Below are positions 3 to 57,783 of a DNA stretch of 64,000 nt, piece after piece. The position numbers and the translations under genes were made by a program. A model generated the notes under the pieces. It had not been told where the DNA came from. It searched no databases and saw only the letters and a program-made list of their open reading frames with translations. Numbering within the stretch: the stretch's first letter is position 1; every line of letters starts with the position of its first letter. Location of the stretch: positions 62,001 through 126,000 of IMG/VR virus record IMGVR_UViG_3300027834_000005. One strand, 5' to 3'.

Positions 3-290
3 GATGGCTCCATTAAATTCAACCATAGCTACGTTAATGGGTTCAAATGCGGGGAACAAACAACATGGAGAAGTAACGGCGTAATCTTCAGAAGTGAAAT
101 GTGCTCTTCAATCTCTGTGTTGCATGGCGAAGCAGTTGAAAGAGATAGAAACGGGTACGTAAATAGCCACTGCATATATGCTAATGGCGTGGTAGTTGAA
201 CGCCTTGACGATAGCGAACTCACCGACGAAGATAAGTTTGAGCTTAGGCTTAAGTACGGAGACATTGGTTTCCTAAAGCACTTCAAGTAG
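3..290 (+). CDS. Tag-array protein, MORN-variant class (5' partial)
   Basis: Frame open from window start; ends LTDEDKFELRLKYG. Confidence 0.8.
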   Translation, partial: DGSIKFNHSYVNGFKCGEQTTWRSNGVIFRSEMCSSISVLHGEAVERDRNGYVNSHCIYANGVVVERLDDSELTDEDKFELRLKYGDIGFLKHFK

Positions 291-298
291 GAACGTAT

Positions 299-619
299 AT
301 GAGACAAGTTGATCGTGATGACATAGTTACAGGTACGAAGTTCTTATTGGTAGCTAAGCACACTAATGATATTGTCATTGGCGAGGTAATTTCAAAGTCT
401 AGAAGTAATTTTTACTACAAGATTGGAAACGGTAGAGTTTACGTGTTGGGTTTCACCACTACGGAGGTTTTGCCTGTGCCCGATTTGAGGGTCATACCAT
501 TAGACTATATGGATTGGTATGTGGAACAGGGCGAAATCAGAGACCAAGACGTTTTCCTCGCTAAGTTAAGTGGTGACTGGAACGACGTAGTAGATAAGAT
601 AACAGGAAGAAATCTATGA
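299..619 (+). CDS. Tag-array protein, LSGDW class
   Basis: DQDVFLAKLSGDW. Confidence 0.8.
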   Translation: MRQVDRDDIVTGTKFLLVAKHTNDIVIGEVISKSRSNFYYKIGNGRVYVLGFTTTEVLPVPDLRVIPLDYMDWYVEQGEIRDQDVFLAKLSGDWNDVVDKITGRNL

Positions 620-1002
620 CCATGCGTATTGTTACTTCTAGGGACCTAATCAATGAAGGAATGGAGCTTCTCCTTTTTTCATTCACTGATAAGGAGAAGC
701 ACTCACACGGCATATTCGTAGAGAAGTCTGTATCTATGTGGACTGAAGGCCCAGAGTATATAATAGATATCACCAGAAAAGACGGTAACACTACAAAGTT
801 TGGTGCTAAGAAACATGTATTAATGGGTGTCGTACCTTACTCAGAAAAAGATGGCATCAAGAAGTTCTTGGTTGCTATACCAGTTTCAAGTTTAGATGAG
901 AACGACCTGTTTCTGTTAAAACTAAGTAATAATGCTGATCATATAAGAGCTAAGACAAAAAAGCTTATCAACTCATATTCAATTGAACACTGGGTAGACT
1001 AA
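616..1002 (+). CDS. Tag-array protein, LSGDW class
   Basis: DENDLFLLKLSNN; ATGA overlap. Confidence 0.8.
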   Translation: MTMRIVTSRDLINEGMELLLFSFTDKEKHSHGIFVEKSVSMWTEGPEYIIDITRKDGNTTKFGAKKHVLMGVVPYSEKDGIKKFLVAIPVSSLDENDLFLLKLSNNADHIRAKTKKLINSYSIEHWVD

Positions 1003-1433
1003 TGTCGGAATTAAAACGCATAGTAGAAAGAAGTGGCGGAATCATAGAAACGTTCCAAGTTGATGAAACTGGCTCGAAACAGGGAGTCAGTGTTAGGACG
1101 TTCGAGAACGGAAAGCCATGGCTTATATCTTATTACCAAAATGGGTTCTTACATGGCGAATTCATAGAGCTGCACGAAGATGGGTACATACGTGAGCACT
1201 CTATGTACTCTAATGGTAAACAGTGCGGCGAGATGGTATTAAAAAGAGATGACAGGGTAGTACGCCATGAAATATGGTATAGTGCAGAATTGGTCCATAC
1301 ATTCATGTATCTTGGATCTATTTTCTGTGAACCAACAGAAGAAACCAAGTTTGAAATGACACTTAAATACGGCACCAAGTGGTTACCCAAGAGGACATAT
1401 GAAGAGTTATCAGCTGAATTTGAACAGTCCTAA
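1002..1433 (+). CDS. Tag-array protein, MORN-variant class
   Basis: YQNGFLHGEF repeats; PTEETKFEMTLKYG. Confidence 0.85.
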   Translation: MSELKRIVERSGGIIETFQVDETGSKQGVSVRTFENGKPWLISYYQNGFLHGEFIELHEDGYIREHSMYSNGKQCGEMVLKRDDRVVRHEIWYSAELVHTFMYLGSIFCEPTEETKFEMTLKYGTKWLPKRTYEELSAEFEQS

Positions 1434-1722
1434 TTATAGAACTATAAATAAAAAAACATTAGTTCAAGATCTACCTCATAACACAATGCTTATCGGCATA
1501 GATAAGCATAATAGTGGGGATGCGATACACATACAGATTGGCGAAGATGGACGTCATATGTGTAACGGTTCGGTATGCTCTAACCTGCATCTTGATAATG
1601 ATAGATACGCATATGTACCTGAATCTAGCCTAAGTGAAGAAGCCGTGTTCGAAGCTAAGTTGCGTGGTGATTGGAGTGAAGTGGCAATTGAAGCTGCTTC
1701 ACTATACTACCGTGTCTATTAA
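1399..1722 (+). CDS. Tag-array protein, LSGDW class
   Basis: SEEAVFEAKLRGDW; start uncertain. Confidence 0.75.
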   Translation: MKSYQLNLNSPNYRTINKKTLVQDLPHNTMLIGIDKHNSGDAIHIQIGEDGRHMCNGSVCSNLHLDNDRYAYVPESSLSEEAVFEAKLRGDWSEVAIEAASLYYRVY

Positions 1723-1729
1723 TCCGTAT

Positions 1730-2155
1730 ATGAATCTTCCATTCGACCATCTCATATTCACTACGGATATGGAAGTGGGGAAGGAAATATTAGTGTACCG
1801 TCATGATGATCACGCTGGTGACAGGTATTCTTTTAAGGCTAATATATTCAGAGTACATGATGAATGTGATAGTGATGGTGATTATGATATGCAGCGCATG
1901 ATTGCCTCCCCAGATAACGTGATGGATCAGAAATTCAGCTTTGTTAGACTAGATGAATATAATGGCAACAAACTATGGATGGATTGCATTACGTTATTAG
2001 GTATACCTATACGGTATATAACCGATGAAGATCAGTTTCATGCCAGACTCACTGGGGATTGGAGAGACGTTGCTGATAAAATACGTATAGCTAGAGATGC
2101 GTACGATGAGAATGTTTTGGCTAAAGACTTAGAGGACTTCTTTGATGACTTATAG
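1730..2155 (+). CDS. Tag-array protein, LSGDW class
   Basis: TDEDQFHARLTGDW; start uncertain (GTG 1712 possible). Confidence 0.75.
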   Translation: MNLPFDHLIFTTDMEVGKEILVYRHDDHAGDRYSFKANIFRVHDECDSDGDYDMQRMIASPDNVMDQKFSFVRLDEYNGNKLWMDCITLLGIPIRYITDEDQFHARLTGDWRDVADKIRIARDAYDENVLAKDLEDFFDDL

Positions 2156-2471
2156 TTACTACCCGATAACAAAGCTTACTGATATACAACCATCAGATAC
2201 AGTGTATTACGTGTCTTTAAATCTACGTCAAGGTGTCAATCCTTTGACAGTTAGTATTGATGATGAATCGTGTATAACTTTAACGGCGGCTATGCCTACT
2301 AAATCAGGTAATGACAGTATTGAGTTGAAACATTATCACCTCCCTGATCAATACTCTAGTGAATTCTTAGTAAGAGCTGACAATATAGACCCTAAAGACA
2401 TATTTTATGTTAAGATTTCAGGGGACTACAAAGACCTACACAGGAAAGTATTAGATGCGTTCGAAAGGTGA
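2145..2471 (+). CDS. Tag-array protein, LSGDW class
   Basis: DPKDIFYVKISGDY. Confidence 0.8.
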   Translation: MTYSYYPITKLTDIQPSDTVYYVSLNLRQGVNPLTVSIDDESCITLTAAMPTKSGNDSIELKHYHLPDQYSSEFLVRADNIDPKDIFYVKISGDYKDLHRKVLDAFER

Positions 2472-2790
2472 TATTAGTTGTGATTTTTACATGGAGTGTT
2501 TCGAATGTGCTGGTTTCTATTCATACGAAAAAGAACACGCACTAGGTGACATAATTAACGTGTTCGTTTATAGAGAATATGAACATGATTTCGTCATTAA
2601 AATAAGTTATCTAACTCCACTACATGAAACTAAATGGGGAATGATAACCGTAGAAGAAGACCACATCGTCATGGAGTTCGGTGTCAATGGTACATTCAAA
2701 TTCAAGCTTAGTATGACTGAAGATATAAAGTTTCAAAAATTACTTGATGGGTCTTTACCTACTATTTTTTTAGACGTGGATATAATATGA
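2455..2790 (+). CDS. Tag-array protein, LDGxLP class
   Basis: MTEDIKFQKLLDGSLP. Confidence 0.8.
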   Translation: MRSKGDISCDFYMECFECAGFYSYEKEHALGDIINVFVYREYEHDFVIKISYLTPLHETKWGMITVEEDHIVMEFGVNGTFKFKLSMTEDIKFQKLLDGSLPTIFLDVDII

Positions 2791-3149
2791 AAGATATTTA
2801 CACAGAATCAAACTTTGAATTGATATGCATTAAGACAGAACATACTCCTATGACGTACGGTCATGTCCTTGGTAAAGTCCAACATATTACGTACACTTGT
2901 ACCTCTAAAAACGGAATAGTCCACGGTATACGTACCAACAGGGATACATACCAAACCACTAACAGAACGGAGGGGTATGCTAGTCTATTGTACGGAGGCG
3001 GTAGTTTAGGAGAATATGCACTGTACGTATTTAATATGGACGAAGAAGAGAAGTTTAAAAAAATATTAGATGGTTCCATCCCAACCTATCTGTCACACGT
3101 GATCACTGAAGGAGAGCACAATGAAAGAAAGAAGCGTATGTTTAAGTGA
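2787..3149 (+). CDS. Tag-array protein, LDGxLP class
   Basis: MDEEEKFKKILDGSIP. Confidence 0.8.
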   Translation: MKDIYTESNFELICIKTEHTPMTYGHVLGKVQHITYTCTSKNGIVHGIRTNRDTYQTTNRTEGYASLLYGGGSLGEYALYVFNMDEEEKFKKILDGSIPTYLSHVITEGEHNERKKRMFK

Positions 3150-3447
3150 TGGCGGTGGCAGAACAAAGTATTTCACTGACGAGGCTGGAGATGCCCAAGG
3201 TCTTTTTCTAGGATTCAGTGAAGAAGGCTACCTATGTACTCGTTGTATATTCTTGGACGATAAATGGCATGGTGAGTACGTACGGTACGATAAAGAAGGT
3301 AGCGTTATTGAGCGAGAGTTTTATGAACATGGTGTCCGTATTGTATTACCACCACACATGAACACGTTAAACCTTACGGACGAAGATCTATTCGAATTGA
3401 GATTCACCCACCACGAAATACAATACTTGCCGGAGATGGGAGAATGA
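3121..3447 (+). CDS. Tag-array protein, MORN-variant class
   Basis: WHGEYVRY; LTDEDLFELRF. Confidence 0.8.
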   Translation: MKERSVCLSDGGGRTKYFTDEAGDAQGLFLGFSEEGYLCTRCIFLDDKWHGEYVRYDKEGSVIEREFYEHGVRIVLPPHMNTLNLTDEDLFELRFTHHEIQYLPEMGE

Positions 3448-3845: not shown

Positions 3846-3846
3846 C

Positions 3847-4191
3847 ATGGATTCATACTGTCTAATAGAAAACATAAATGACTTAGAGAAAGGCGAATGG
3901 TACTACAGTATATTACGAAATGAGGCACATAGATGCGCTAAGATTAGTAGATACGCCCATTACCGTTCGATAGCATATATGATCCTTAAGGGCTATGAAT
4001 ATTCGCAAGACGGTTGGCTAGACGACGATGACATAACAGTATTCAATAAGGACCCATACCTCTACATAAAATTAGATTTGATCTCTGATGAAGACATGTT
4101 CCTCAGTAAGATGAGCGGTGATGGCTCCCACATAAAAGAGAAGGCTTACGTAGTTTCACACGGTTGTTATTATACCGAACTAACACGTTGA
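3847..4191 (+). CDS. Tag-array protein, LSGDW class
   Basis: SDEDMFLSKMSGD. Confidence 0.8.
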   Translation: MDSYCLIENINDLEKGEWYYSILRNEAHRCAKISRYAHYRSIAYMILKGYEYSQDGWLDDDDITVFNKDPYLYIKLDLISDEDMFLSKMSGDGSHIKEKAYVVSHGCYYTELTR

Positions 4192-4216
4192 CAACGTCAT
4201 CATAATAAGGTAAAAT
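4188..4216 (+). promoter_or_regulatory. sigma70-type promoter inside array
   Basis: TTGACA-N17-TAAAAT; similar 17-bp-spacer promoters at 5790-5818 (TTGCCA/TATAAT) and 11395-11423 (TTGCAT/TACAAT). Confidence 0.7.
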
Positions 4217-4240
4217 GCTCGCTCAAGTAAGGGACTAAAC

Positions 4241-5025: not shown

Positions 5026-5047
5026 TTACCATTCATTGGAGAATACG

Positions 5048-5500
5048 ATGATAAAATCAGAAAGTGGCAAAGACATAGTAGCCCACACTTTATACCATGA
5101 CAGTAAAGGTCTTGAGGTTGGCCTATGCGTTTTCATGCACGATTCCGTCACTATGCGCGAAACTTCAGAGTATTCCCGTGGGGACTATCACGGTGTTAGG
5201 AAGACTTGGTACACCAATGGACAACAATCTACTTACTCGGTGTACGAACACGGACGAAAAAACGGTATCTATCTCAGTTGGGACCTTGAGGGCAGACTAA
5301 ATTGCGTCATGTATTTCTGCAACGGTAAAAGACATGGGGAAATGAAGAGATATTCCTCTACAGGCGACTTATTTCATAAAATTCTCATCGATGATCACCC
5401 TCACTGTACCATGCCTATCACTGAAGAAGACAAGTTCGAACTGTGCCTTAGACACGAAGGATTATCTTTCATAGAGGACGACTATGATATACGACCATAA
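5048..5500 (+). CDS. Tag-array protein, MORN-variant class
   Basis: HGVRKTWYTNGQ; ITEEDKFELCLRH; RBS GGAG. Confidence 0.85.
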   Translation: MIKSESGKDIVAHTLYHDSKGLEVGLCVFMHDSVTMRETSEYSRGDYHGVRKTWYTNGQQSTYSVYEHGRKNGIYLSWDLEGRLNCVMYFCNGKRHGEMKRYSSTGDLFHKILIDDHPHCTMPITEEDKFELCLRHEGLSFIEDDYDIRP

Positions 5501-5798
5501 CAATGACGTTCCTAACGGAGAGATAGTCATAAACATGAACGAAGAGCTTATGGTTCCTTGGTCATGTAATCCTAGAATGAAACTTTCCTATGGAATTAAA
5601 CTTGACTTAGTAAATGGTAGACGTTTCTCTATACTTACTAACGTCCGTAAAGTTCATATGGTGTGTACGTTGGATGAGTTCAAATGCATAACTGAAGATA
5701 TGCTATTCCAAGCTCGCCTATCTGAAGACTGGAATGAGGTTGCCACTGCACTAAAGGATAATTCTCCATACCCATATATAAAACGTGACTTGCCATAA
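5484..5798 (+). CDS. Tag-array protein, LSGDW class
   Basis: TEDMLFQARLSEDW. Confidence 0.8.
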   Translation: MIYDHNNDVPNGEIVINMNEELMVPWSCNPRMKLSYGIKLDLVNGRRFSILTNVRKVHMVCTLDEFKCITEDMLFQARLSEDWNEVATALKDNSPYPYIKRDLP

Positions 5799-5850
5799 CG
5801 TCGAATATACTGTATAATTACGCTCACACCTGAAGAGTCCAAATAATACT

Positions 5851-6234
5851 ATGAATTTAAAACTTATCGAGACTGATAACGAGTTATACCATATTGATGC
5901 CACTGGTAAAATTCAAGGTGAATACCGCAGAAGATACCGTAGTGGCGCTCGTCAAGTGAGAAGCTTCTACGTAGATGATAAAGCGGAAGGAATGTTTCGT
6001 AGTTGGCATGAAAATGGCACGCCTTGTGTCAATTGCATGATGAAAAACAATGCACCGCATGGTGAATATTTGATGCTGCACGATTGTGGATCAGTCAACG
6101 AACACACCATCCACATTGATGGCGTTACGATAGTGACTCCAGAACACATAGACGTTACAGACATGTCAGAGACAGACATGTTTGAATTGAAACTTTTATA
6201 TGGAGACATAGGTTTCCTTCGTGACAATAAATGA
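5851..6234 (+). CDS. Tag-array protein, MORN-variant class
   Basis: EGMFRSWHENG; SETDMFELKLLYG. Confidence 0.85.
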   Translation: MNLKLIETDNELYHIDATGKIQGEYRRRYRSGARQVRSFYVDDKAEGMFRSWHENGTPCVNCMMKNNAPHGEYLMLHDCGSVNEHTIHIDGVTIVTPEHIDVTDMSETDMFELKLLYGDIGFLRDNK

Positions 6235-6542
6235 CTACCATAAAGAAAAAAACCACTAATGGGTCCTATTGGCATGAAAATGACAACGGCGACAAGCATG
6301 GATTTTTCTGTAAGATGTACAGTAATGGGCTGCCATGGTGTGTGGGTTTCTACAGGAACAACGTATTACACGGCGAATCAATACACTTCAATAAAGATGG
6401 TACTGCCATAGAACGAGTCATATACATAGATGACTGCGCAGTAGAACGTCACGTTAGTCTGATGACCCCAGAAGAGAAATTTGAATACTGCTTGCGCAAT
6501 GGCCAAGTTGAATTCTTAGGAGAAGAATATGACGCCTTTTAA
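6231..6542 (+). CDS. Tag-array protein, MORN-variant class
   Basis: LHGESIHF; TPEEKFEYCLRNG. Confidence 0.8.
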   Translation: MTTIKKKTTNGSYWHENDNGDKHGFFCKMYSNGLPWCVGFYRNNVLHGESIHFNKDGTAIERVIYIDDCAVERHVSLMTPEEKFEYCLRNGQVEFLGEEYDAF

Positions 6543-7842: not shown

Positions 7843-7845
7843 AAC

Positions 7846-8142
7846 ATGAAGCTAACGATACTATTCATTATTGCGTTACTATCTCTACCATTGCACTCTA
7901 AAGAGAAACATAGAGAGGTAGTAGTGTGCGTGTCAGAGACGGCATCTGTTAGGTTCCATAAGGACACTGCTAGAGATAAAAGATATCGTGGTAATGAGTT
8001 AGTTAGTGTGAGTATTAAGGACTTACGTAGCGGTAAACGATTACGATTACGTAGTCGTGACTTCATAGACATGTCTTGTTTTTCAGAGCCAGCACCTAGG
8101 CCTATAACCCATGCCGATATACCTTACTTGGCGGTACTATGA
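7846..8142 (+). CDS. Secreted hypothetical protein (untagged)
   Basis: Signal-peptide-like MKLTILFIIALLSLPLHS; lacks tag. Confidence 0.7.
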   Translation: MKLTILFIIALLSLPLHSKEKHREVVVCVSETASVRFHKDTARDKRYRGNELVSVSIKDLRSGKRLRLRSRDFIDMSCFSEPAPRPITHADIPYLAVL

Positions 8143-9311: not shown

Positions 9312-9312
9312 A

Positions 9313-9606: not shown

Positions 9607-9685
9607 GTCGTATTAAAATGTTACTCTTTCATTTCCAAATGACACGAATGTGTGCTATAATCCTACGAATACAAAGGTCAATACC

Positions 9686-10096
9686 ATGAAACATAATAAT
9701 CATTTGCCGAAAGATATCCAGATAGCAAGCCGTGACGTCGAAGTTGGAAAGACATACATCATGATCGGTGTGAATGAGTCGGTGGCTGAATATATAGTAG
9801 TTACTAAGATAACTGACTTTGAAGTCCCTATGTTCGGGGGAGTAACCGACACAATAAGCTACGTTGATCTAACCAACGATAGGCTATATACGTGCGATAT
9901 TAATATATTCATAGACCACTTTAAGGATGCATACGTCACTACATTAGACAGTATTAAGTCCACGTTGGACGGGGAATACTTATTCCAAATGGCTTTAACC
10001 AGTAACGACGTTAACCTAGTTAGACTGTGGGTCGAAGATCATAATCTCATCCACACATACTGTGACGACCTTAGTGGACGAGGAAAGGCATCATGA
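9686..10096 (+). CDS. Tag-array protein, LSGDW class (divergent)
   Basis: DGEYLFQMALTSND. Confidence 0.75.
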   Translation: MKHNNHLPKDIQIASRDVEVGKTYIMIGVNESVAEYIVVTKITDFEVPMFGGVTDTISYVDLTNDRLYTCDINIFIDHFKDAYVTTLDSIKSTLDGEYLFQMALTSNDVNLVRLWVEDHNLIHTYCDDLSGRGKAS

Positions 10097-10671
10097 GTCT
10101 CACGGAGTACAGAGATGACACATGTGTTTACTACACCGATGAATACGGTAGATACCAAGGTGAATACATATCATGGTACGGAACTGGCACTGTGTATCAA
10201 ACTCTCACATACGTTGATGATTTAGTTCACGGTGACATTATCACATGGCATCCGAACGGCAAGGTTAAATCTGTGAGGTCCTATGACATGGGCATAGTCA
10301 ACGGGGATTTTGCCTATTGGTGTGAATTTGGTACAATCGAATCATCGAAGTCTTATTCTGACGGTAAGTTACATGGTCTTTATCGTAGATGGTGGAGTAA
10401 CGGTCACCCACGATCTGAAACATTAATGGTTAACGATGACGCTCAAGGCGAATACAAAGAATGGCACTGTACCGGCGTTTTGAAATCTAGAACGTCATAT
10501 GTTAATGATCACATGCATGGCGAACTTATAAATTATTCTACTGACGGCACCGTATCAGGTAATTCATACATGGTAAACGATGTAGAGTTAATAGACTTAC
10601 TTCAGACCAACGTCACGGAGGAAGATAAGTTTGCATTAACACTGATTCACGGAGGTAAATGGCTGTCATGA
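10093..10671 (+). CDS. Tag-array protein, MORN-variant class
   Basis: Multiple HGxYxxWxxNG repeats; VTEEDKFALTLIHGG. Confidence 0.85.
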   Translation: MSLTEYRDDTCVYYTDEYGRYQGEYISWYGTGTVYQTLTYVDDLVHGDIITWHPNGKVKSVRSYDMGIVNGDFAYWCEFGTIESSKSYSDGKLHGLYRRWWSNGHPRSETLMVNDDAQGEYKEWHCTGVLKSRTSYVNDHMHGELINYSTDGTVSGNSYMVNDVELIDLLQTNVTEEDKFALTLIHGGKWLS

Positions 10672-11036
10672 ACGAAGAATTTACTGAACATAAATCTTCC
10701 AGAGTTCACTTTTTTACCGACGAAGAAGGACGAATGCATGGTAAATGTACTCGTTGGTTTGGCGATGGAAACTTAGATACTGAATCCTTCTATATCCATG
10801 GTGAACTAGACGGAGAATACAAAGAATGGTATCATAACGGTAACATTGCTGATCATGCCCAGATGAAAGATGGCTACACTAACGGCGAAAGTAAAGGCTG
10901 GAATAGTAACGGTAAACTTATAAATCACACGTATACTGTAGGCAATGTAATATCTGTGGATCTACTATCCAAAGACTTATCAGACGAAGATAAGTTCGAA
11001 ATAACATTGACCTATGGCGGGAAATGGTTACCATGA
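10668..11036 (+). CDS. Tag-array protein, MORN-variant class
   Basis: DGEYKEWYHNG; LSDEDKFEITLTYGG. Confidence 0.85.
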   Translation: MNEEFTEHKSSRVHFFTDEEGRMHGKCTRWFGDGNLDTESFYIHGELDGEYKEWYHNGNIADHAQMKDGYTNGESKGWNSNGKLINHTYTVGNVISVDLLSKDLSDEDKFEITLTYGGKWLP

Positions 11037-11380: not shown

Positions 11381-11458
11381 GTATCTCCCTCCCCTTGCAT
11401 TCTTTTTGAAACTACTGTACAATTAACTTCACATTAACAACTCACATAAGATTATCAT

Positions 11459-11842
11459 ATGAATACGGAATCTGTAGGTATGACTGTGGAAACTATAGAG
11501 ATTGGTATAGTTCGCGCTGTGCCTACTGGAAGCATTTTTCTGAAATGGCCATTTAATGAACAAGACAGTAGAGTATTCTTCAAGATATCCGATGACGAAA
11601 TGTACATATTCAGCGTAGTGTATGATCGCCCATCAGAAAAACACATCGTGAGAAAACGTAAAAGAACTATTAATAAATGCGCATGGACTAAATTCACATG
11701 CGTTAGTGTGTCCGAAGAAGACATATTCCATGCCCAATTATCTGAAGATTGGGGTAGTATTTGTAGACAAGCTAATGAACATAGAAATAGAATCAACTGT
11801 AGACATGTTGATTCTATGGAAGTGGATAAGTTGGAAGTGTAG
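11459..11842 (+). CDS. Tag-array protein, LSGDW class
   Basis: SEEDIFHAQLSEDW. Confidence 0.8.
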   Translation: MNTESVGMTVETIEIGIVRAVPTGSIFLKWPFNEQDSRVFFKISDDEMYIFSVVYDRPSEKHIVRKRKRTINKCAWTKFTCVSVSEEDIFHAQLSEDWGSICRQANEHRNRINCRHVDSMEVDKLEV

Positions 11843-11843
11843 A

Positions 11844-12068
11844 ATGTCATACGAGGTGAGGTATTCAAAGGGAAATTATCATTACCGAATGAGTAATGAT
11901 TTCCTGTTCCAAGGAGAGTGTAAATTCTGGGATGAAAATGATATCATAAACATGCACGTGTATGTGATTGATAACGAGATACTACATGATTTCCTCAAGG
12001 ATGAACCTATCACCGAAGAACTCAAATTCGAAATCACTTTAAGATATGGGAATTTATGGCTACCATGA
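11844..12068 (+). CDS. Tag-array protein, minimal MORN-variant class
   Basis: QGECKFW; ITEELKFEITLRYG. Confidence 0.75.
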   Translation: MSYEVRYSKGNYHYRMSNDFLFQGECKFWDENDIINMHVYVIDNEILHDFLKDEPITEELKFEITLRYGNLWLP

Positions 12069-12433
12069 ACATACACGAATTAGCACTCAGTTTACACGTA
12101 GGTTCGTCATACGTATCATATTGTATAAATATCGACAATGAATTAGAGTCTATAGGTTTATTCAAAGTGGTTGACATGGACATTGACGAAGAGACGATAA
12201 CCACACACGACATGTTCAGGAATAAAGAAGACAAGAATTTTATCGAAGACCTAATTAGAATGCATGATAGCGAGGATGAGACTTTCATAATGCTTGATGT
12301 AGTCCATGCTGCACTACCAGCAGAATTCATATTCGAAGCAACCCTACGTGGTGATTTCAGAATCGTCCTTTCTGAATACTTCGGACTACAAGGCGTAGTG
12401 AATGCTAAAGGCATAATGGAGCTAAAAGTATGA
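12065..12433 (+). CDS. Tag-array protein, LSGDW class
   Basis: PAEFIFEATLRGDF. Confidence 0.8.
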   Translation: MNIHELALSLHVGSSYVSYCINIDNELESIGLFKVVDMDIDEETITTHDMFRNKEDKNFIEDLIRMHDSEDETFIMLDVVHAALPAEFIFEATLRGDFRIVLSEYFGLQGVVNAKGIMELKV

Positions 12434-12810
12434 GTACATTGAAAACACTATGCATACTAAAGAACCTCAAGGAAGGCGAAACTTACGTCATGTTCAGATG
12501 TGTAATGGACCAAGTGTCGTACATGCGTACCATACGTGTTGAAAAGGTAGAGACACGACCAAGTGAACTAGGATTAACCAAAGCCTGTACTTTCATCCAC
12601 TTCCATAACGTCACGATGGACACCCACGGCATCCAAACGTTAAGTTCGTTTACGTCTACGTTCAGGGATAAACGAATTGAGGTGCTCGATGACATACTAT
12701 CGTCATTGTCTGACGAAGAGAACCTTCAGGTCTTTGAAGAAACGCTCAAAGGTACAGTGAACTCTCACATGCGCATCTGGTTCAAGAAGGAGGGTTTGAT
12801 ATGGCGGTAG
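12430..12810 (+). CDS. Tag-array protein, LSGDW class
   Basis: DEENLQVFEETLKG. Confidence 0.75.
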   Translation: MSTLKTLCILKNLKEGETYVMFRCVMDQVSYMRTIRVEKVETRPSELGLTKACTFIHFHNVTMDTHGIQTLSSFTSTFRDKRIEVLDDILSSLSDEENLQVFEETLKGTVNSHMRIWFKKEGLIWR

Positions 12811-13764: not shown

Positions 13765-13845
13765 GCTAGTAATACTATCCATACTTGCGAAGAAGATAAA
13801 TTTGAGATATACTTGATCTACGGTCATATGGAATTTATACCATGA
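13751..13845 (+). pseudogene. Deleted MORN-class array gene (orphan tag)
   Basis: TCEEDKFEIYLIYGHMEFIP* at 13783-13845 has no in-frame start; ATG 13751 is out of frame. Confidence 0.7.
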
Positions 13846-14285
13846 GTAAGCTAAAATTTATTGAAACGCCAACGTCACAGTACTTCGAAGATGAACTTGG
13901 AAGATTACAAGGTAAGCATATAGAATGGTATGAATTCGAGGACGGATATAAATGCATGAAATCTTTGAGTTTTTACAAAGACGATGAGATGCATGGTCCT
14001 TTCAAACGATGGTTCGAAAATGGTAAACCACAAAGATTCTGTACGTACGTGGAAGATAGACTCGATGGTGAGTACCAGAGATGGCATCGTAACAATAAAA
14101 GAAAGAGACATTGTTTCTATAAGAACACTGTGTTACATGGAGAGTACCAAAGATGGGATGAGGATGGAGAAGTAGAAATTAACAGACTCTATGTTGATGG
14201 TAAAAGATTATCGTGTCCTATACCTACATCCGAAGAAGATAAATTTGAGATATGCCTGAAATATGGACATATGGATTTCATATGA
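13842..14285 (+). CDS. Tag-array protein, MORN-variant class
   Basis: HGPFKRWFENG; TSEEDKFEICLKYG. Confidence 0.85.
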   Translation: MSKLKFIETPTSQYFEDELGRLQGKHIEWYEFEDGYKCMKSLSFYKDDEMHGPFKRWFENGKPQRFCTYVEDRLDGEYQRWHRNNKRKRHCFYKNTVLHGEYQRWDEDGEVEINRLYVDGKRLSCPIPTSEEDKFEICLKYGHMDFI

Positions 14286-14809
14286 AACTAGAAGAGGTCA
14301 GAACTAGAACACGACATTACTACGTTGATGAAGAAGACAATATTCAAGGCGAATATATACGTTACTACGACGATGCCCCATCGGTAATTCGATCCGCATG
14401 CACGTACATAGACGACAAAAAAGAAGGTTTATATGTACATTTCTACAGAAACGGGAAAGTGGATAGCGTAAGTGAGTACGTAAATAATGAAAAGGACGGC
14501 GAGTATGTGTCGTGGCATAAAAATGGCGGTGTTTGTACCAGAACTACGTTCAGGAAAGGCGTGGAGAATGGAGAGTACATGGACTGGCATGCGAACGGTC
14601 AGTTATGGGAACATCTATTCTTTAAGGATGGACGTGAACATGGTGAATCTATAATGATTAAAGAGAATGGCGAGGTAAGGTCACATGCCATATACCTTGA
14701 GGGTAGAGAAACTAAGATACCAATACCAACCACTGAGGAAGATCAATTTCTCCTCTGCCTAGAACACGGTCACATGGATTTCCTACCAATAGGACTGCAT
14801 GACGTATGA
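14282..14809 (+). CDS. Tag-array protein, MORN-variant class
   Basis: GEYMDWHANGQ; TEEDQFLLCLEHG. Confidence 0.85.
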   Translation: MKLEEVRTRTRHYYVDEEDNIQGEYIRYYDDAPSVIRSACTYIDDKKEGLYVHFYRNGKVDSVSEYVNNEKDGEYVSWHKNGGVCTRTTFRKGVENGEYMDWHANGQLWEHLFFKDGREHGESIMIKENGEVRSHAIYLEGRETKIPIPTTEEDQFLLCLEHGHMDFLPIGLHDV

Positions 14810-15348
14810 AACTTAAAGAGATAAAGACACGAACCATACACTACTTCGAAGATGAACTTGGACGAAGACAAGGTGAACTAATTCTTCGTTATGAGGAGAA
14901 ACCATCACAAATTAAATCCATTAATAATTACGTTGATGGTATTAAAGTTGGCACCAGTATAGATTGGTACATGAACGGTAAGATAAGAACCGTGGCCAAC
15001 TACGTGAATGAGCTTAAGGAAGGTAACCACGCTGAATGGCACGAAAGCGGCAATAAACGATCACGTACTTTTTACAAGGACGGTTCAGAGCATGGCGAGT
15101 ACATGGACTGGCATGCGAACGGTCAGTTATGGGAGCACGTATTTCTAATAGATAGTGCAGAAAACGGAGAGTCTATAATTTTCGACATATATGGTAATGT
15201 AACAGACCATGACATTTTTGTTAATGGTACGATAATTGATGTTCCAATCCCTACGTGTGAAGAAGAACAGTTTCTCTTGTGCCTTGAGTATGGACACATG
15301 GAATTCTTTCCTATAGGTATGTATGAACTTACAGCAAGTAAACACTAG
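14806..15348 (+). CDS. Tag-array protein, MORN-variant class
   Basis: Close paralog of previous gene; CEEEQFLLCLEYG. Confidence 0.85.
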   Translation: MKLKEIKTRTIHYFEDELGRRQGELILRYEEKPSQIKSINNYVDGIKVGTSIDWYMNGKIRTVANYVNELKEGNHAEWHESGNKRSRTFYKDGSEHGEYMDWHANGQLWEHVFLIDSAENGESIIFDIYGNVTDHDIFVNGTIIDVPIPTCEEEQFLLCLEYGHMEFFPIGMYELTASKH

Positions 15349-15613
15349 AGAAGAAACGTTCACCGTGGACAGAGATACCGGATGCATGGAAGGTGAATAT
15401 GTTAGCCGGTACAGTGACGGCTCAGTAAATATACACTGCTTCTATAAGAAGCATAAATTACATGGTGAGTTCAAAAGATGGGTGAATAGTATAAAACCAC
15501 TCGTCCATATTATATACATTGATGGGGTCCATTCCGATATCACTCCTCCAGTCACTGAGGAGGAAAGGTTCCTTTTCAAATTACAATACGATCTTCCATT
15601 ATTAGGAGAGTAA
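15323..15613 (+). CDS. Tag-array protein, MORN-variant class
   Basis: LHGEFKRW; VTEEERFLFKLQY. Confidence 0.8.
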   Translation: MNLQQVNTREETFTVDRDTGCMEGEYVSRYSDGSVNIHCFYKKHKLHGEFKRWVNSIKPLVHIIYIDGVHSDITPPVTEEERFLFKLQYDLPLLGE

Positions 15614-15615
15614 AC

Positions 15616-15954
15616 ATGACCCCATCAGAGAAATTAATACGGTCAGCATCCATTGGTGACACGATACTAATTGCCGAAAAGCGTGATTCCGTCACGTGGT
15701 CTGTAGATGAAACTAAGCTAGTGGTACAAGATGTGATTCTGTATGGTGAGAGAACCATAAAATATACGTTCAAGGATAATGACGAAACAGAGAGACTTAC
15801 CATGTCTATTTCTGACTGTGATCTTGAGCGTATATTCCGATCACACGAGCAAGTCATCTTATTAGTTAAGATCATCCCAGAAGACATCATGTTCCAATGT
15901 AAATTGTCAGGTGACTACTCAGACGCTGTGGCGTTCCAAGGCTTTGCTCCGTGA
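15616..15954 (+). CDS. Tag-array protein (PEDxLFQC subfamily)
   Basis: PEDIMFQCKLSGDY. Confidence 0.8.
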   Translation: MTPSEKLIRSASIGDTILIAEKRDSVTWSVDETKLVVQDVILYGERTIKYTFKDNDETERLTMSISDCDLERIFRSHEQVILLVKIIPEDIMFQCKLSGDYSDAVAFQGFAP

Positions 15955-17563: not shown

Positions 17564-17651
17564 TGATGTGAAAGTAGGTGACATTTTGTACTACCCAGTA
17601 GCTGGATCATTAAGTGATCTATTACGGGACATGGGCAATTGGAATGTGTGA
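17550..17651 (+). pseudogene. Internally deleted array gene (33 aa)
   Basis: MTSFNDVKVGDILYYP fused directly to tag tail VAGSLSDLL. Confidence 0.65.
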
Positions 17652-17952: not shown

Positions 17953-17963
17953 GGTAGATAGTT

Positions 17964-18290
17964 ATGGAAGCATACGTAAAAGCACTACATGGTGCTAAAA
18001 AAGGCGACATTGTTACAGTAGTTGAATACGACGAGGATAACAGATCGTGGGATCTCTTCATAGAGATAAAAATCGTGAGTTTACATACATATCCCATGCG
18101 ATTAGAGTACACGCATGAAGGAATGAGCATCACCAACTACGTTAACCTTGATAATCTACTGAGCACCGGCATAAATGCCATTTTCTTAAGAAGAACTATA
18201 CCGGAAGACATTATATTCCAATGTTCGTTATCAGGCAACTATGTAGAGGCTGTAAAGTACCACGGATACGATACCTATGAAACTGCATAA
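17964..18290 (+). CDS. Tag-array protein (PEDxLFQC subfamily)
   Basis: PEDIIFQCSLSGNY. Confidence 0.8.
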   Translation: MEAYVKALHGAKKGDIVTVVEYDEDNRSWDLFIEIKIVSLHTYPMRLEYTHEGMSITNYVNLDNLLSTGINAIFLRRTIPEDIIFQCSLSGNYVEAVKYHGYDTYETA

Positions 18291-18570
18291 AATAGAGACA
18301 CCTTCATACATCATGTTCGTAGATGAGTATGGAAGGAAACAAGGTACATTTAAAGAATTCTATGAGGATGGACGATTAGAATACATATACAACTATGTAG
18401 ATGATCTTAAGCATGGCGATTATAAAGGATACACAAAGGACGGAGAAATTCTAGTCCATACACTATGTATTAATGGTGAGTTTGTGCATAGGTATCACAT
18501 TAACGGTCCTCTATCAGCCGAAGACAAGTTCGAGCTGTGCCTTAAGCACGGACATTTGGAGTTCCTATAA
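18277..18570 (+). CDS. Tag-array protein, MORN-variant class
   Basis: LSAEDKFELCLKHG. Confidence 0.85.
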   Translation: MKLHKIETPSYIMFVDEYGRKQGTFKEFYEDGRLEYIYNYVDDLKHGDYKGYTKDGEILVHTLCINGEFVHRYHINGPLSAEDKFELCLKHGHLEFL

Positions 18571-18860
18571 TGTTAACTGAACATACGTCTAGTTTTTATA
18601 ACTACTTCACTGATAACCTTGGAAGGAAACAAGGTTTATTCAATACGTACTACGATAATGGCCAAAAAGAACAACATGACTACTTCGTGAATGATAAAAG
18701 ACATGGCGATAGTAAAAGTTACTACACTGGCGGTCAACTACGTACCCACATACTATTCATAAATGGGTCTATGCACCATAGCTACCTATGCGATGGTCCT
18801 CTATCAGCCGAAGACAAGTTCGAGCTGTGCCTTAAGTACGGACATTTGGAGTTCCTATGA
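18570..18860 (+). CDS. Tag-array protein, MORN-variant class
   Basis: LSAEDKFELCLKYG. Confidence 0.85.
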   Translation: MLTEHTSSFYNYFTDNLGRKQGLFNTYYDNGQKEQHDYFVNDKRHGDSKSYYTGGQLRTHILFINGSMHHSYLCDGPLSAEDKFELCLKYGHLEFL

Positions 18861-19150: not shown

Positions 19151-19206
19151 CATAAACTTATGGTATACTCTCTCATCACACACAGAACACCTACAAGGAT
19201 AGTAAT

Positions 19207-19869
19207 ATGAACGAAGAAACAACAGCCGTAGATACAGAAGCAGCAGAAGATCAAAATGTAACTATGGGACAAAGAGACATCACTACCCATGGCACACTGG
19301 ACAACAGTAAAGCAATGGAGTCTGCAGACGGCGATTGCATATGGATGGTGAGAGATGGCAAGCTAGAAATCATCAAGAAACATGAAGAATACTTCCTATG
19401 TATGTTATTCGATCACGTGAATAAAGCCTATGGCATAACCATTGAGAGAAACCCATGTGAGGGTGCCACTCATAGATTACCTTGCTTACAACAAACCATC
19501 GTTACGTATCCTGATGCCAAGCAAGATGACGGGAGCACAAAGGAAGTGGGATACATTCTGCAGCACTTTACACCGCCTGACACAATGACTGGCATACCTA
19601 ACTTAGAGAACACTGAGTCTCGTAGTAAGATGAAGATCACTATGGCTGATGGTAAAGTCGTTAAGAGCAAGAACCATATGCTCGTGCAACTAGACACAGG
19701 AAAGACTCTTCATGATAAGAAGAAAGCATTCACTAAGAAAGATAAAACCATGCACGTGAATAGACATGGCGTTACGCACTGGTTAGATGATAAACTTGTG
19801 AGACTGTCAGAGGACTTCTTCCGTCTGTACTCTGAAATCCCAGATAGCACAATCACTGAACTAACCTAG
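19207..19869 (+). CDS. Hypothetical protein (untagged, own promoter)
   Basis: 220 aa; RBS AAGGA; upstream TAGACT-N17-TATACT. Confidence 0.8.
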   Translation: MNEETTAVDTEAAEDQNVTMGQRDITTHGTLDNSKAMESADGDCIWMVRDGKLEIIKKHEEYFLCMLFDHVNKAYGITIERNPCEGATHRLPCLQQTIVTYPDAKQDDGSTKEVGYILQHFTPPDTMTGIPNLENTESRSKMKITMADGKVVKSKNHMLVQLDTGKTLHDKKKAFTKKDKTMHVNRHGVTHWLDDKLVRLSEDFFRLYSEIPDSTITELT

Positions 19870-19889
19870 TCCGTTTAAGGAATATTCCT

Positions 19890-20192
19890 GTGAGTACTCT
19901 AACTGAACATAGGTCTCTGACTTATCACTATTTCGGTGATGATGACGGGAATATACATGGTGAATATAAGGGCTGGTGTGATGACGGTACACAAACTGTG
20001 CATGCATTATACGTCCATGGAAAAAGACATGGTGAGTACAAGAGCTGGTATAATGATGGGGATTTAAGCACCCATTGCATATACGTTCATGGAAAAAGAC
20101 ATGATGTGCCTTACATCGATATCTTATCTGATGAAGACAAATTCGAGCTATGTCTCATACATGGACATATGGAGTTCTTACCCAATACATAA
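19890..20192 (+). CDS. Tag-array protein, MORN-variant class
   Basis: HGEYKSWY; LSDEDKFELCLIHG. Confidence 0.85.
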   Translation: MSTLTEHRSLTYHYFGDDDGNIHGEYKGWCDDGTQTVHALYVHGKRHGEYKSWYNDGDLSTHCIYVHGKRHDVPYIDILSDEDKFELCLIHGHMEFLPNT

Positions 20193-20550
20193 CCCACTCT
20201 TTCGTACTTTTTCGTACCTGATTTTATTATATACGGACATTATCTTTGCTAAAACAGGGGTAAAAAGTACGAAATGAGTTTATGTACGAAGACCCTGAGC
20301 GCTCTGTATTGCCATATAAGCCACCCAAATAACATACCAACCCAATGACACCTCTATCCCAGTAACGACGCCACACAGAGCTTATATAAGCATTCCCTTT
20401 GGTACATTAACTTATATATAAGTGCAACGCTTTTTTGCCCAAAACACACCCACTTTTTTTCTTACCCCTCGACGTGCGTGTCTCTCTTGTAAACAAATTG
20501 AAAATAATGTATACTCTCCTACATAAATTACCATTAGTGACGCATATCAA

Positions 20551-20862
20551 ATGAAGCTAACAGAACACATAACAGACACTTGCCACTTCTTTAAAGATGA
20601 AGAAGGAAGAACTCAAGGCGAATACATATCGTGGTATGATGAAGATAAACAGCAATGTAGTTGTCATTGTTTCTATAAGGATGGCAAAGCTCATGGAGAA
20701 TATTTATCCCTGTATTTTGATGGGAATATCGCATCACACCTTATCATCGTAAATGGCATCGGCACTTCTGAATGCCCTGACAATCTCACAGAAGAAGATA
20801 AGTTTGAGATATGTCTAAAGTATGGACATATGAAATTCCTCACTAACAACTGGAATACGTAA
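20551..20862 (+). CDS. Tag-array protein, MORN-variant class
   Basis: LTEEDKFEICLKYG. Confidence 0.85.
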   Translation: MKLTEHITDTCHFFKDEEGRTQGEYISWYDEDKQQCSCHCFYKDGKAHGEYLSLYFDGNIASHLIIVNGIGTSECPDNLTEEDKFEICLKYGHMKFLTNNWNT

Positions 20863-21230
20863 TGGATATCAAAGATATAAAAGTAGGCGATATCATCTAC
20901 TACCAACAACTACCTGGTCGCCCACTAGAAACACACAAGGTAGTAGAACTCCGCATGAACAAAAATAAACCCACTGTATGTGTACGTTACGCAGAAGATG
21001 GAGGACATCGCTCTCTCATCACAGAGAAAGAATATGATGAACTCAGAGAGAACGGTAGACTCATCACAGACAAAGAAGCACGAACTAATTTTTCCGATGA
21101 AGAACTATTCCAAGCTGAGCTAGCAGGAGACACACCACAACTCATTACCAAGTACTTGGAAAACAAAGCCAAAGCATTCGATGCACATCTCATACACAAG
21201 AGCACATTGCCATATGCCCCAGATGAATGA
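20862..21230 (+). CDS. Tag-array protein (GD..Y subfamily)
   Basis: VGDIIYY; SDEELFQAELAGD. Confidence 0.8.
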   Translation: MDIKDIKVGDIIYYQQLPGRPLETHKVVELRMNKNKPTVCVRYAEDGGHRSLITEKEYDELRENGRLITDKEARTNFSDEELFQAELAGDTPQLITKYLENKAKAFDAHLIHKSTLPYAPDE

Positions 21231-21576
21231 TTACTATAGCTTACAAGTGGGAGATGAGTACTACTACCCCATAGGACACCACCCACTAAAAATCAACACG
21301 TGGACCGTAGAACAGATACCAACGTCCCCACAAGGAGGCACTACATACGTGAGAAGAGATTTCGATAAGGTACGGTCTGCCATATCTCTACCCAACTGGA
21401 TGTCTCTAGTGGCAAAAGGAAACATCGTCACAAAGAAATACCTCATAGATATGGTGGGGGAAGAAGAACTCTTTCAACACATACTAGCCGACACTCTTAA
21501 AGACCTACTACTCATAGCGAAGATACAGATGATAGAGGAAGGCAAGGATACGATACGTAAAGGAATAATGAGATGA
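21223..21576 (+). CDS. Tag-array protein (GD..Y subfamily)
   Basis: VGDEYYYP; GEEELFQHILAD. Confidence 0.8.
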   Translation: MNDYYSLQVGDEYYYPIGHHPLKINTWTVEQIPTSPQGGTTYVRRDFDKVRSAISLPNWMSLVAKGNIVTKKYLIDMVGEEELFQHILADTLKDLLLIAKIQMIEEGKDTIRKGIMR

Positions 21577-21878
21577 CCAAGCACATACCCGATAAAGACT
21601 CATCTCTATATGGCGTGCAAGAGGGAGACAAATACTACTCCATAAGAGAACATGAAGCCAACCTATGGATTGTACACACCGTACGACAAAGACATATATG
21701 CATAACTAATGAAGGCGATGACAAACTAACCCTCACTAAAGATAGCTGGTATACGCTCATAGCAACACAAATCATGGTAGCACATGAAGACTTAATACAT
21801 GCGTACGGAGAAGAAGCACTCTTCCAACACCTACTAGCTGATACCCTATTAGAACTACTAACTCTATATACTGATTAA
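21573..21878 (+). CDS. Tag-array protein (GD..Y subfamily)
   Basis: EGDKYY; GEEALFQHLLAD. Confidence 0.8.
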   Translation: MTKHIPDKDSSLYGVQEGDKYYSIREHEANLWIVHTVRQRHICITNEGDDKLTLTKDSWYTLIATQIMVAHEDLIHAYGEEALFQHLLADTLLELLTLYTD

Positions 21879-21889
21879 TAGGCAAGAAG

Positions 21890-22186
21890 ATGAATCTAAC
21901 TGAACATAACACTCCAAGTAGAAGTCCATGCTTCCACGACGAGAATAGAAACAAACAAGGTCTGTATTCGCGTACTTTTTTCACAGGAAAGGAAGCCGCA
22001 CGAGTATTCTACCTTGATAACTATGAACATGGTGAAGTGAAGCGCTGGTGCGTTAACGGAGATGTACTTGAACATGCCATCTATGTACGTGGGCACGTAG
22101 TTAAAGACCTCATGAACGACATACTCACTGATGAAGATAAGTTCCTACTGTGCCTAGAACATGGACACATGGAATTCTTATCATAA
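21890..22186 (+). CDS. Tag-array protein, MORN-variant class
   Basis: LTDEDKFLLCLEHG. Confidence 0.85.
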   Translation: MNLTEHNTPSRSPCFHDENRNKQGLYSRTFFTGKEAARVFYLDNYEHGEVKRWCVNGDVLEHAIYVRGHVVKDLMNDILTDEDKFLLCLEHGHMEFLS

Positions 22187-31987: not shown

Positions 31988-31988
31988 C

Positions 31989-57709: not shown

Positions 57710-57783
57710 GTGTATGCCCTATATTAATAGTATTATATACTATTATTTTGAAGTTTACTATAGTCTTATAGGATTTTTCGGCT

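What the first reader, a model, noticed from the sequence alone, without database searches (positions are those of the whole stretch)
3..22186. A 60-gene array of variable domains sharing one C-terminal docking-like tag: candidate modular adaptor system
Seen: 58 of 60 consecutive, mostly translationally coupled small genes carry [ST/P]-[DE]-[DE]-x-x-F-x-x-x-L-x-G near the C-terminus. The tag is fused to unrelated N-terminal scaffolds: 18 MORN-variant repeat proteins (EEDKFELCLKYG), 32 LSGD(W/Y)-type and 8 LDGxLP-type. The classes are interleaved, and one of only two untagged genes is the only one with a signal peptide. Known: variable binding domain plus constant short motif is the architecture of substrate adaptors (F-box, poxvirus ANK-PRANC) and of secretion or packaging signals. 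Inference: the tag is an acidic amphipathic helix that docks all these proteins onto one hub (phage or host protease/chaperone, capsid-loading or compartment-import machinery), while the N-termini recognise diverse host or defence targets. I know of no described phage system of this type.
Basis: partly seen in the sequence, partly recalled or inferred. Interest (0 to 1): 0.92.

Follow-up and report, generated by a model that had tools for sequence, protein, structure and literature searches.

The report
Ninety-gene phage paralog array, shared helix
A giant uncultivated phage spends about 35 kb on roughly 92 back-to-back small genes that all keep one short helix motif after a highly variable beta-rich domain; this is one of the largest gene-family expansions seen in a phage, but the motif looks like a built-in part of each protein, not a loose docking tag.

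Summary
All 60 tiled plus-strand genes at 3-22186 exist, and 58 carry phi-[ST/P]-[DE]-E-[DE]-x-F-x-x-x-L-x-G. The array continues 13 kb upstream of the window, giving 95 tiled genes and 92 tagged over about 35 kb of a 347-410 kb jumbo phage contig. Codons at the invariant positions vary, so selection acts on the protein.

There are two scaffolds, not three: 23 MORN_2-repeat proteins and about 69 members of one very divergent new family. That family includes both the LSGDW and the LDGxLP types.

The motif is not a terminal peptide. AlphaFold2 models it with high confidence as a capped helix directly after the last strand, followed by Gly, a second short helix and a variable tail of 0-57 residues. 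A non-MORN-trained matrix still finds it at the right place in all 23 MORN proteins, so it is a genuinely shared module. A six-gene minus-strand cluster (55707-59697) carries it in mid-protein.

No hub was identified and no relatives were found outside this phage lineage. My best reading is an early-expressed battery of variable binders, organised like a polyimmunity locus, with a constant structural helix. A shared partner is not excluded.

The parts
3..22186 (+). Window part of the tandem array: 60 tiled small genes (median 112 aa, median pI about 5). The array continues upstream to contig position ~48990, which is L004:~6350.
   Evidence: MORN_2-class genes: 3-290 (5' end lies upstream of the window), 1002-1433, 3121-3447, 5048-5500, 5851-6234, 6231-6542, 10093-10671, 10659-11036, 11805-12068, 13842-14285, 14252-14809, 14806-15348, 15323-15613, 18277-18570, 18570-18860, 19890-20192, 20551-20862, 21890-22186. 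All other tagged genes belong to the second family.
20551..20862 (+). Representative MORN_2-class member, 103 aa, modelled.
   Evidence: AlphaFold2 mean pLDDT 88.4, pTM 0.77. Seven strands, then helix 81-91, which is the motif. Best PDB fold match is the SET7/9 MORN-like domain, E 0.03, not significant.
20785..20832 (+). 16-residue motif of the MORN representative (EEDKF..L..G type).
   Evidence: Matrix score 34.1 bits. Helix 81-91 in the model.
15616..15954 (+). Representative member of the non-MORN family, 112 aa, modelled.
   Evidence: AlphaFold2 mean pLDDT 90.8, pTM 0.78. Order of elements: helix 3-10, five strands, helix 67-76, strand 79-83, motif helix 89-98, helix 102-107. No significant fold match in PDB or BFVD.
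15874..15921 (+). 16-residue motif of the non-MORN representative (IPED..F...LSGDY type).
   Evidence: Matrix score 36.5 bits. Block pLDDT 95-96 over residues 81-100.
7846..8142 (+). Untagged gene with a signal-peptide-like N-terminus.
   Evidence: Matrix score -17.7. It is the only array protein with 10 of 12 hydrophobic residues near its N-terminus. No Pfam hit.
19207..19869 (+). Untagged 220-aa gene.
   Evidence: Matrix score -9.5. No Pfam or PHROG hit.
9686..10096 (+). Member with a degenerate motif (..E..F...L.S).
   Evidence: Low matrix score, but it hits the family HMM as P0018, E 5e-11.
12430..12810 (+). Member with the motif shifted by an insertion (..VFEETLKGTV).
4189..4217 (+). Sigma-70-like promoter match in an intergenic gap (11 of 12).
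5791..5819 (+). Sigma-70-like promoter match in an intergenic gap (11 of 12).
9633..9662 (+). Sigma-70-like promoter match with extended -10, in a gap.
13789..13839 (+). Non-coding relic of a MORN-type motif in the gap before gene 13842.
   Evidence: The gap sequence translates to an EEDKFE...YGHMEF-like string. A 23-nt exact repeat of the motif region of gene 13842 is present.
17564..17643 (+). Relic of an N-terminal (V-G-D-I-L-Y-Y-P) fragment in a gap.
18505..18568 (+). Gene-conversion patch over the motif. It is 63/64 nt identical to 18795-18858 in the neighbouring paralog, while the rest of the two genes has saturated synonymous sites.
20193..20550 (+). Largest non-coding gap in the array (358 nt), with a weak promoter-like match at its 3' end.
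   Evidence: No Rfam family.
55707..59697 (-). Second, smaller cluster. Six genes (59266-59697, 58730-59269, 57212-57709, 56823-57215, 56384-56830, 55707-56477) carry the same or a degenerate motif in mid-protein, followed by 40-130 further residues. Three unrelated small membrane-protein genes (58047-58689) lie between them.
   Evidence: A strict regex gives 4 matches there, against 0.04 expected in shuffles of the non-array part. 59266-59697 hits the non-MORN HMM over positions 44-109, E 1e-4.

Best explanation
This is a lineage-specific tandem expansion in a jumbo phage of at least 347 kb, probably at least 410 kb. It comprises about 92 paralogs over about 35 kb, roughly a tenth of the genome. 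The products are small, acidic, cytoplasmic two-part proteins.

Part one is a fast-evolving beta-rich recognition domain of two kinds: MORN_2 hairpin repeats (23 genes), or a new five-to-six-stranded domain (about 69 genes). Part two is a constant module of about 22 residues: a capped amphipathic helix, a Gly, and a second short helix. It packs as an integral piece of each protein.

The genes grew by old duplications, deletions and local gene conversion (birth and death). They are probably transcribed as several polycistronic early operons from host-type sigma-70 promoters. They most likely act in parallel as a repertoire of binders or inhibitors of varied host or competitor proteins, the way bacterial polyimmunity loci and giant-virus repeat-protein families are thought to work.

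Shown: the array, the motif, protein-level selection, the two scaffolds, confident helical models, and rarity outside this lineage. Inferred: intramolecular packing of the helix, early expression, and the binder or inhibitor function.
For: Extent and tiling:
-.

Selection at protein level:
- L is encoded by all six codons and F by both.
- Every paralog pair is at most 49% identical, with saturated synonymous sites.

One non-MORN family:
- Collinear hhalign matches of 87-97 columns at 89-95% probability.
- N-terminus-only iterative HMM searches link LSGDW-type and LDGxLP-type members.
- Core positions are shared.

Scaffold identity:
- MORN_2 hits. MORN repeats are protein-binding modules (PMC7725318).

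Helix as part of the fold:
- Block pLDDT 83-96, no long linker, N-cap box and Gly C-cap, nine conserved hydrophobic positions.
- The motif sits in mid-protein in the second cluster.

Birth and death:
- Relic fragments and a 64-nt conversion patch.

Early operons:
- Promoter matches of at least 10 of 12 are 12-fold enriched in the gaps, p = 1.3e-5.
- 60 of 94 junctions overlap.

Organisation:
- It matches the published hallmarks of polyimmunity loci: same orientation, tiny spacers, distantly related tandem paralogs, no interspersed toxins (PMC3482391).
- Repeat-protein multigene families scale with genome size in giant viruses (PMC5753266).
Against: - No coordinates were available, so burial of F and L was not measured.
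- Sharing one helix motif, including its conserved acidic residues, across two unrelated scaffolds and a third context is more than a purely structural element needs. It argues for a common function.
- No target, no host and no expression data are known.
- The MORN members hit no YwqK-type immunity model.
- No toxin or defence gene lies nearby.
- Promoter matches are consensus matches only.
Confidence: 0.5

Rival explanations
1. The constant helix is a portable docking module that brings about 90 variable binders to one hub (protease, chaperone, polymerase, or import or packaging machinery). This would be a phage adaptor system analogous to F-box or ANK-PRANC proteins.
For: - The motif is shared between scaffolds with no detectable homology, and this holds under cross-validation.
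- It also occurs in a third context, in mid-protein.
- The conserved stripe E3-F6-L10 includes acidic residues that core packing does not require.
- The motif is conserved in foreign arrays on other metagenome contigs.
- One conversion patch shows the module can move between paralogs.
Against: - It is modelled as an ordered helix contiguous with the domain, not as a tethered peptide.
- Many hydrophobic positions are conserved.
- The flanks are class-specific and there is no sign of systematic shuffling.
- A variable tail follows the motif.
- No hub candidate is adjacent.
- There is no similarity to F-box or PRANC in Pfam.
Confidence: 0.25
2. The motif is a virion-targeting and/or prohead-protease processing signal. 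The phi-[ST]-[DE]-E start resembles the L/I-x-E and S/A/G-x-E cleavage consensus of T4-like and phiKZ-like prohead proteases (recalled knowledge). On this reading the array encodes packaged, ejected proteins.
For: The only support is the sequence resemblance of motif positions 0-3, plus the precedent of polymorphic T4 internal proteins that share a targeting sequence (recalled).
Against: - Known targeting sequences are N-terminal, whereas this motif is C-proximal or internal.
- Ninety different cargo species is implausible.
- The array has sigma-70-like promoters typical of early genes, not late genes.
- No head genes are nearby.
Confidence: 0.07
3. The helix mediates association among the paralogs themselves, giving homo- or hetero-oligomers. 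For example, it could dock in trans into the aromatic groove of MORN-class members.
For: MORN grooves bind partner segments with high affinity, and MORN proteins dimerise (PMC7725318). The two classes are interleaved and co-transcribed.
Against: MORN members carry their own helix. There is no test of this, and single-chain models are already confident.
Confidence: 0.08
4. The array is an artefact: not real genes, or a DNA-level repeat whose translation merely looks conserved.
For: None, beyond the absence of database relatives.
Against: - The ORFs tile one strand with coupled junctions.
- Codons at conserved residues vary.
- There are almost no DNA repeats.
- Both models are confident.
- The same architecture is present on independent contigs from other samples.
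Confidence: 0.01

Closest known systems
Bacterial polyimmunity loci (Zhang, Aravind et al. 2012, PMC3482391)
   Same: Long uninterrupted runs of co-oriented, tightly spaced and only distantly related paralogs. They encode small binding proteins thought to act in parallel rather than as one complex. MORN_2 repeats occur in YwqK (recalled), and YwqK is the immunity protein of the YwqJ deaminase toxin (10.64898/2026.09.29.755374).
   Different: This array is in a phage, not a bacterium. It is far larger (about 92 genes, against 19 in the example cited). There are no toxin systems nearby. The main family is not a known immunity family. A constant C-proximal helix motif across scaffolds is not a described feature of such loci.
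Repeat-protein multigene families of giant eukaryotic viruses (ANK, MORN, F-box, BTB; PMC5753266) and poxvirus ANK-PRANC proteins
   Same: Large lineage-specific expansions of protein-binding scaffolds in very large viral genomes. MORN repeats are among them. ANK-PRANC combines a variable binder with a constant C-terminal motif.
   Different: The host domain of life is different. There is no homology to F-box or PRANC. Here the constant element is modelled as part of the fold, and no hub is known.
Lineage-specific expansions in jumbo phages, e.g. about 35 zinc-ribbon copies in Bacillus phage G (PMC7824862)
   Same: A single small-domain family amplified many times in one jumbo phage.
   Different: This one has about three times more copies, sits in one contiguous array, uses two scaffolds that share one motif, and has no annotated domain for the major family.
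T4-type internal proteins with a shared capsid-targeting sequence (recalled knowledge)
   Same: Polymorphic proteins that share one short constant signal.
   Different: That signal is N-terminal, is cleaved, and involves few genes. Here the motif is C-proximal or internal, is a folded helix, and occurs in about 92 genes.

Membership tests
MORN_2 repeat proteins (Pfam PF07661) | Match to the repeat HMM in several tandem copies | tested here: met
   11 of 18 window members match at E up to 0.1, best 1.9e-14. The alignment shows the repeated Y..G...G/HGE pattern.
MORN_2 repeat proteins (Pfam PF07661) | Beta-hairpin repeat fold | tested here: inconclusive
   The model is seven consecutive strands. 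The best PDB matches are MORN-type domains (SET7/9, MORN1), but at E 0.03-0.8.
YwqK-type immunity / antitoxin proteins | Match to a curated YwqK-family model | tested here: not met
   NCBIfam returns only the LIC20035 adhesin model, which is MORN-rich.
YwqK-type immunity / antitoxin proteins | Adjacent cognate toxin gene | tested here: not met
   No toxin-like gene lies in or beside the array.
Polyimmunity locus | Co-oriented, tightly spaced, distantly related tandem paralogs not interrupted by toxin genes | tested here: met
   95 genes on one strand. 60 of 94 junctions overlap. All pairs are at most 49% identical.
Polyimmunity locus | Members belong to families shown or predicted to neutralise toxins | tested here: not met
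   The major family has no Pfam, PHROG or PDB relative. For the MORN class there is only the recalled YwqK link.
Adaptor systems with a constant hub-binding motif (F-box, PRANC) | Sequence membership of the constant motif | tested here: not met
   No F-box or PRANC hit in the Pfam scans of all members.
Adaptor systems with a constant hub-binding motif (F-box, PRANC) | The constant motif binds one hub protein | not testable with these tools
   This needs complex prediction or pull-downs. No hub candidate is encoded next to the array.
Capsid-targeting-sequence proteins (T4 internal proteins) | N-terminal targeting peptide removed by the prohead protease | tested here: not met
   The motif lies 43-178 residues from the N-terminus. 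Cleavage itself is not testable here.

The most novel reading that the evidence does not exclude
The 22-residue helix module is a genuinely portable handle that this phage lineage has grafted onto at least three unrelated protein contexts. Through it, about 90 variable binders would be delivered to one common partner. That would make it a phage-encoded combinatorial adaptor system with no described counterpart in bacteriophages.
Probability: 0.2. Interest if true: 0.9.

Novelty: new variant of a known kind. Interest (0 to 1): 0.62.

Why it matters
If the reading is right, this is among the largest single gene-family expansions known in any phage. It would show that jumbo phages, like giant eukaryotic viruses and like bacteria with polyimmunity loci, can build large repertoires of variable binders for conflict with their hosts. 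The major family is a new, confidently foldable small domain found almost nowhere else among 1.8 billion representative proteins. The motif shared across scaffolds gives a concrete, cheap test: mutate F and L, then ask whether the fold or a partner is lost. That test separates 'structural keystone' from 'docking handle'. If it is a handle, it would be a new organising principle for phage accessory proteins.

Tried and rejected
Searches that found nothing:
- Megablast of the array against 50,697 phage records: no match.
- Degenerate DNA patterns for the motif recovered only this phage (347-kb and 410-kb contigs) plus chance hits in viral, metagenome and genome collections.
- Word-indexed protein searches with a MORN member, A1 and A2 returned only self hits and generic MORN_2 proteins that lack the motif.
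- Foldseek against PDB and BFVD: nothing at E of 0.001 or better.
- PDB sequence-profile searches: nothing.
- Rfam on the whole window: only the two tRNAs.
- Longer foreign contigs: only 0.9-1.7 kb pieces exist.

Ideas rejected:
- A DNA-level repeat or recombination signal as the cause of conservation. Codon diversity is high, and there are only three exact repeats of at least 21 nt between genes.
- MORN and non-MORN classes as one detectable family. The N-terminal profiles do not align.
- Recent accordion-like amplification. No pair is above 49% identity and synonymous sites are saturated.
- A hub gene flanking the array.

Full report
**Source and extent**

The window is positions 62001-126000 of IMGVR_UViG_3300027834_000005, a 347,232-bp contig. 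The same proteins also lie on a 410,284-bp contig, JGI24723J26617_10000007. The rest of the window is clearly phage. It holds a tail-collar fibre protein, a Mom-like protein, GP88 and DUF932 proteins, and two tRNAs. There is no nucleotide-level relative among 50,697 deposited phage records.

**The observation**

- Stop-to-stop ORFs on the plus strand tile 3-22186 almost without gaps, giving 60 genes.
- An iteratively refined 16-column matrix scores 56 of the 60 above 12 bits. The maximum in 1,200 shuffled proteins is 10.2 and the 99th percentile is 3.2.
- Four further genes carry degenerate or shifted copies.
- Only 7846-8142 and 19207-19869 lack the motif.
- The consensus over 90 copies is phi-[T/S/P]-[E/D]-E-[D/E]-x-F-x-x-x-L-x-G, with F in 87, L in 83 and E at position 3 in 69.
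- A six-frame scan gives 55 hits in the array strand and 2 in the remaining 42 kb.
- Only 7846-8142 has a signal-like N-terminus.

**The array is larger than reported**

I fetched the contig upstream of the window (L003 and L004). The tiling and the motif continue for another 13 kb, back to about contig position 48990.

- In total there are 95 tiled genes: 23 MORN-class, 69 of the other class and 3 untagged.
- 60 of 94 junctions overlap, 25 of them as ATGA.
- The proteins are small (median 112 aa) and acidic (median pI 5.06).

**Protein-level or DNA-level conservation**

- The invariant Leu uses all six codons and the Phe uses both.
- The closest paralog pairs are at most 49% identical, with saturated synonymous sites. 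All duplications are therefore old.
- Exact DNA repeats between genes are almost absent.
- The one striking exception is a 63/64-nt identical patch covering the motif of neighbours 18277-18570 and 18570-18860. This is a local gene-conversion event.
- Two intergenic gaps hold relics: a MORN-type motif at 13789-13839 and an N-terminal fragment at 17564-17643.
- Together these point to birth-and-death evolution with purifying selection on the peptide.

**How many scaffolds**

- The MORN class matches Pfam MORN_2 (11 of 18, best E 1.9e-14).
- The remaining genes match nothing in Pfam or PHROGs.
- With the motif and tail removed, most of them no longer find each other by phmmer.
- Iterative HMM searches on the N-terminal parts alone still join members with LSGDW-type and LDGxLP-type motifs.
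- Full-length profile comparisons align the subfamilies collinearly over 87-97 columns at 89-95% probability.
- A 63-sequence alignment shows family-wide features beyond the motif. These are an N-terminal D-phi-x-x-G-D-x-phi-phi-C-phi strand, a mid Gly, a Y-x-F strand and an L-x-G turn.
- The '32' and '8' classes are therefore one divergent family.
- MORN and non-MORN profiles align only over the 20-27 motif columns.
- The motif is nevertheless the same in both. A matrix trained only on non-MORN genes selects the annotated site in 23 of 23 MORN proteins, 22 of them above the 99th percentile of shuffles.

**Structure**

- With the paralogs as the alignment, AlphaFold2 gives confident models: pLDDT 90.8 for 15616-15954 and 88.4 for 20551-20862.
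- In the non-MORN protein the motif is helix 89-98. It begins five residues after strand 79-83 and is followed by Gly99 and helix 102-107. Block pLDDT there is 95-96.
- In the MORN protein the motif is helix 81-91, after seven hairpin strands.
- The sequence reads as a textbook capped helix: Ser/Thr/Pro N-cap, acidic N1-N3 and a Gly C-cap.
- Across the family, positions 0, 5, 6, 8, 10, 14, 17, 18 and 21 are hydrophobic. That is the pattern of a helix-Gly-helix packing on a sheet.
- The motif is followed by tails of 0-57 residues.
- These features fit an integral element better than a tethered docking peptide.
- The tools return no coordinates, so I could not measure burial.
- Neither model has a significant neighbour in PDB or BFVD.

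**Distribution**

- An exhaustive HMM search of 1.84 billion representative proteins with the non-MORN profile found 26 proteins.
- 23 of these are the array's own genes. Three are foreign.
- The foreign ones lie on 0.9-1.7 kb contigs from other samples. Their neighbours are again tandem genes with the motif.
- Generic bacterial MORN_2 proteins lack the motif.
- Pattern scans of viral, metagenome and species-representative genome collections returned only this phage and chance hits.
- The system is therefore confined to a rare phage lineage, and it is always arrayed.

**A second cluster**

Six minus-strand genes between 55707 and 59697 carry [ST/P]-x-E-[ED]-x-F-x-x-x-L-x-G, or a degenerate form of it, in mid-protein. 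A further 40-130 residues follow. A strict regex finds four matches there, against 0.04 expected. One of the genes hits the non-MORN HMM beyond the motif. The module is thus not tied to a C-terminal position.

**Expression context**

- Sigma-70-like matches of at least 10 of 12 are 12-fold denser in the 17 gaps of 40 nt or more than in coding sequence (7 of 19 hits in 4.6% of the bases, p = 1.3e-5).
- This suggests several polycistronic operons read by host polymerase, which would make them early genes.
- A different, highly conserved promoter-plus-leader element occurs 13 times at 30-49 kb and never in the array.
- No protease, chaperone or other hub candidate flanks the array.

**Interpretation**

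I favour a very large lineage-specific expansion of two-part binders. Its organisation matches the published hallmarks of polyimmunity loci (PMC3482391). Its logic matches the repeat-protein families of giant viruses (PMC5753266). MORN repeats are established protein-binding modules (PMC7725318), and the MORN-type protein YwqK is a toxin-neutralising immunity protein (10.64898/2026.09.29.755374; that YwqK belongs to MORN_2 is my recollection).

I read the constant helix as a structural keystone that may also present a common surface. The reason is that one motif, acidic residues included, is shared across unrelated scaffolds and a third context. Packaging-signal and paralog-oligomerisation readings are less likely.

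The precedent for size in phages that I could find is about 35 zinc-ribbon copies in phage G (PMC7824862). This array is about three times larger.

Noticed in passing
window 30187-48721, plus strand (13 sites): A highly conserved promoter-plus-leader element: TTGAC, 17 nt, TATTATGG, then a near-identical 5' leader with a strong Shine-Dalgarno sequence just before the ATG. It occurs 13 times, against 0.01 expected, upstream of unrelated small genes and never inside the array. It makes ORF callers add a spurious shared N-terminal peptide.
   Followed up: partly
window 55707-59697, minus strand: A second cluster of six genes carrying the array's helix motif in mid-protein, with longer C-terminal extensions.
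   Followed up: partly
window 58047-58689, minus strand: Three adjacent paralogous genes of about 70 aa. They encode small hydrophobic proteins with a shared Y-G-W-N/D-Y/F motif and sit inside the second cluster.
   Followed up: no
window 18505-18568 and 18795-18858: A 63/64-nt identical patch over the motif of two neighbouring MORN genes that are otherwise saturated at synonymous sites. This is local gene conversion.
   Followed up: yes
window 13789-13839 and 17564-17643: Non-coding relics of a motif and of an N-terminal strand in intergenic gaps. They are traces of deletions between paralogs.
   Followed up: partly
window 20193-20550: A 358-nt non-coding gap inside the otherwise tightly packed array. 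There is no Rfam match and its function is unknown.
   Followed up: partly
window 38979-39055 and 39222-39298: tRNA-Arg(TCT) and tRNA-Met(CAT). The Arg tRNA is 87-91% identical to tRNAs of Acinetobacter and Pseudomonas jumbo phages.
   Followed up: no
window 44757-45380: A Mom-like DNA-modification protein (Pfam Mom, E 2e-40). This suggests the phage modifies its DNA.
   Followed up: no
window 55707-56477 (minus) and 49028-49321 (plus): Short in-frame tandem peptide repeats in two ORFs: V-S-T-K four times and V-L-V-G-Y-T four times.
   Followed up: no
contig JGI24723J26617_10000007 (L012): The same phage is present on a 410,284-bp contig from another assembly, so the genome is probably at least 410 kb.
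   Followed up: partly
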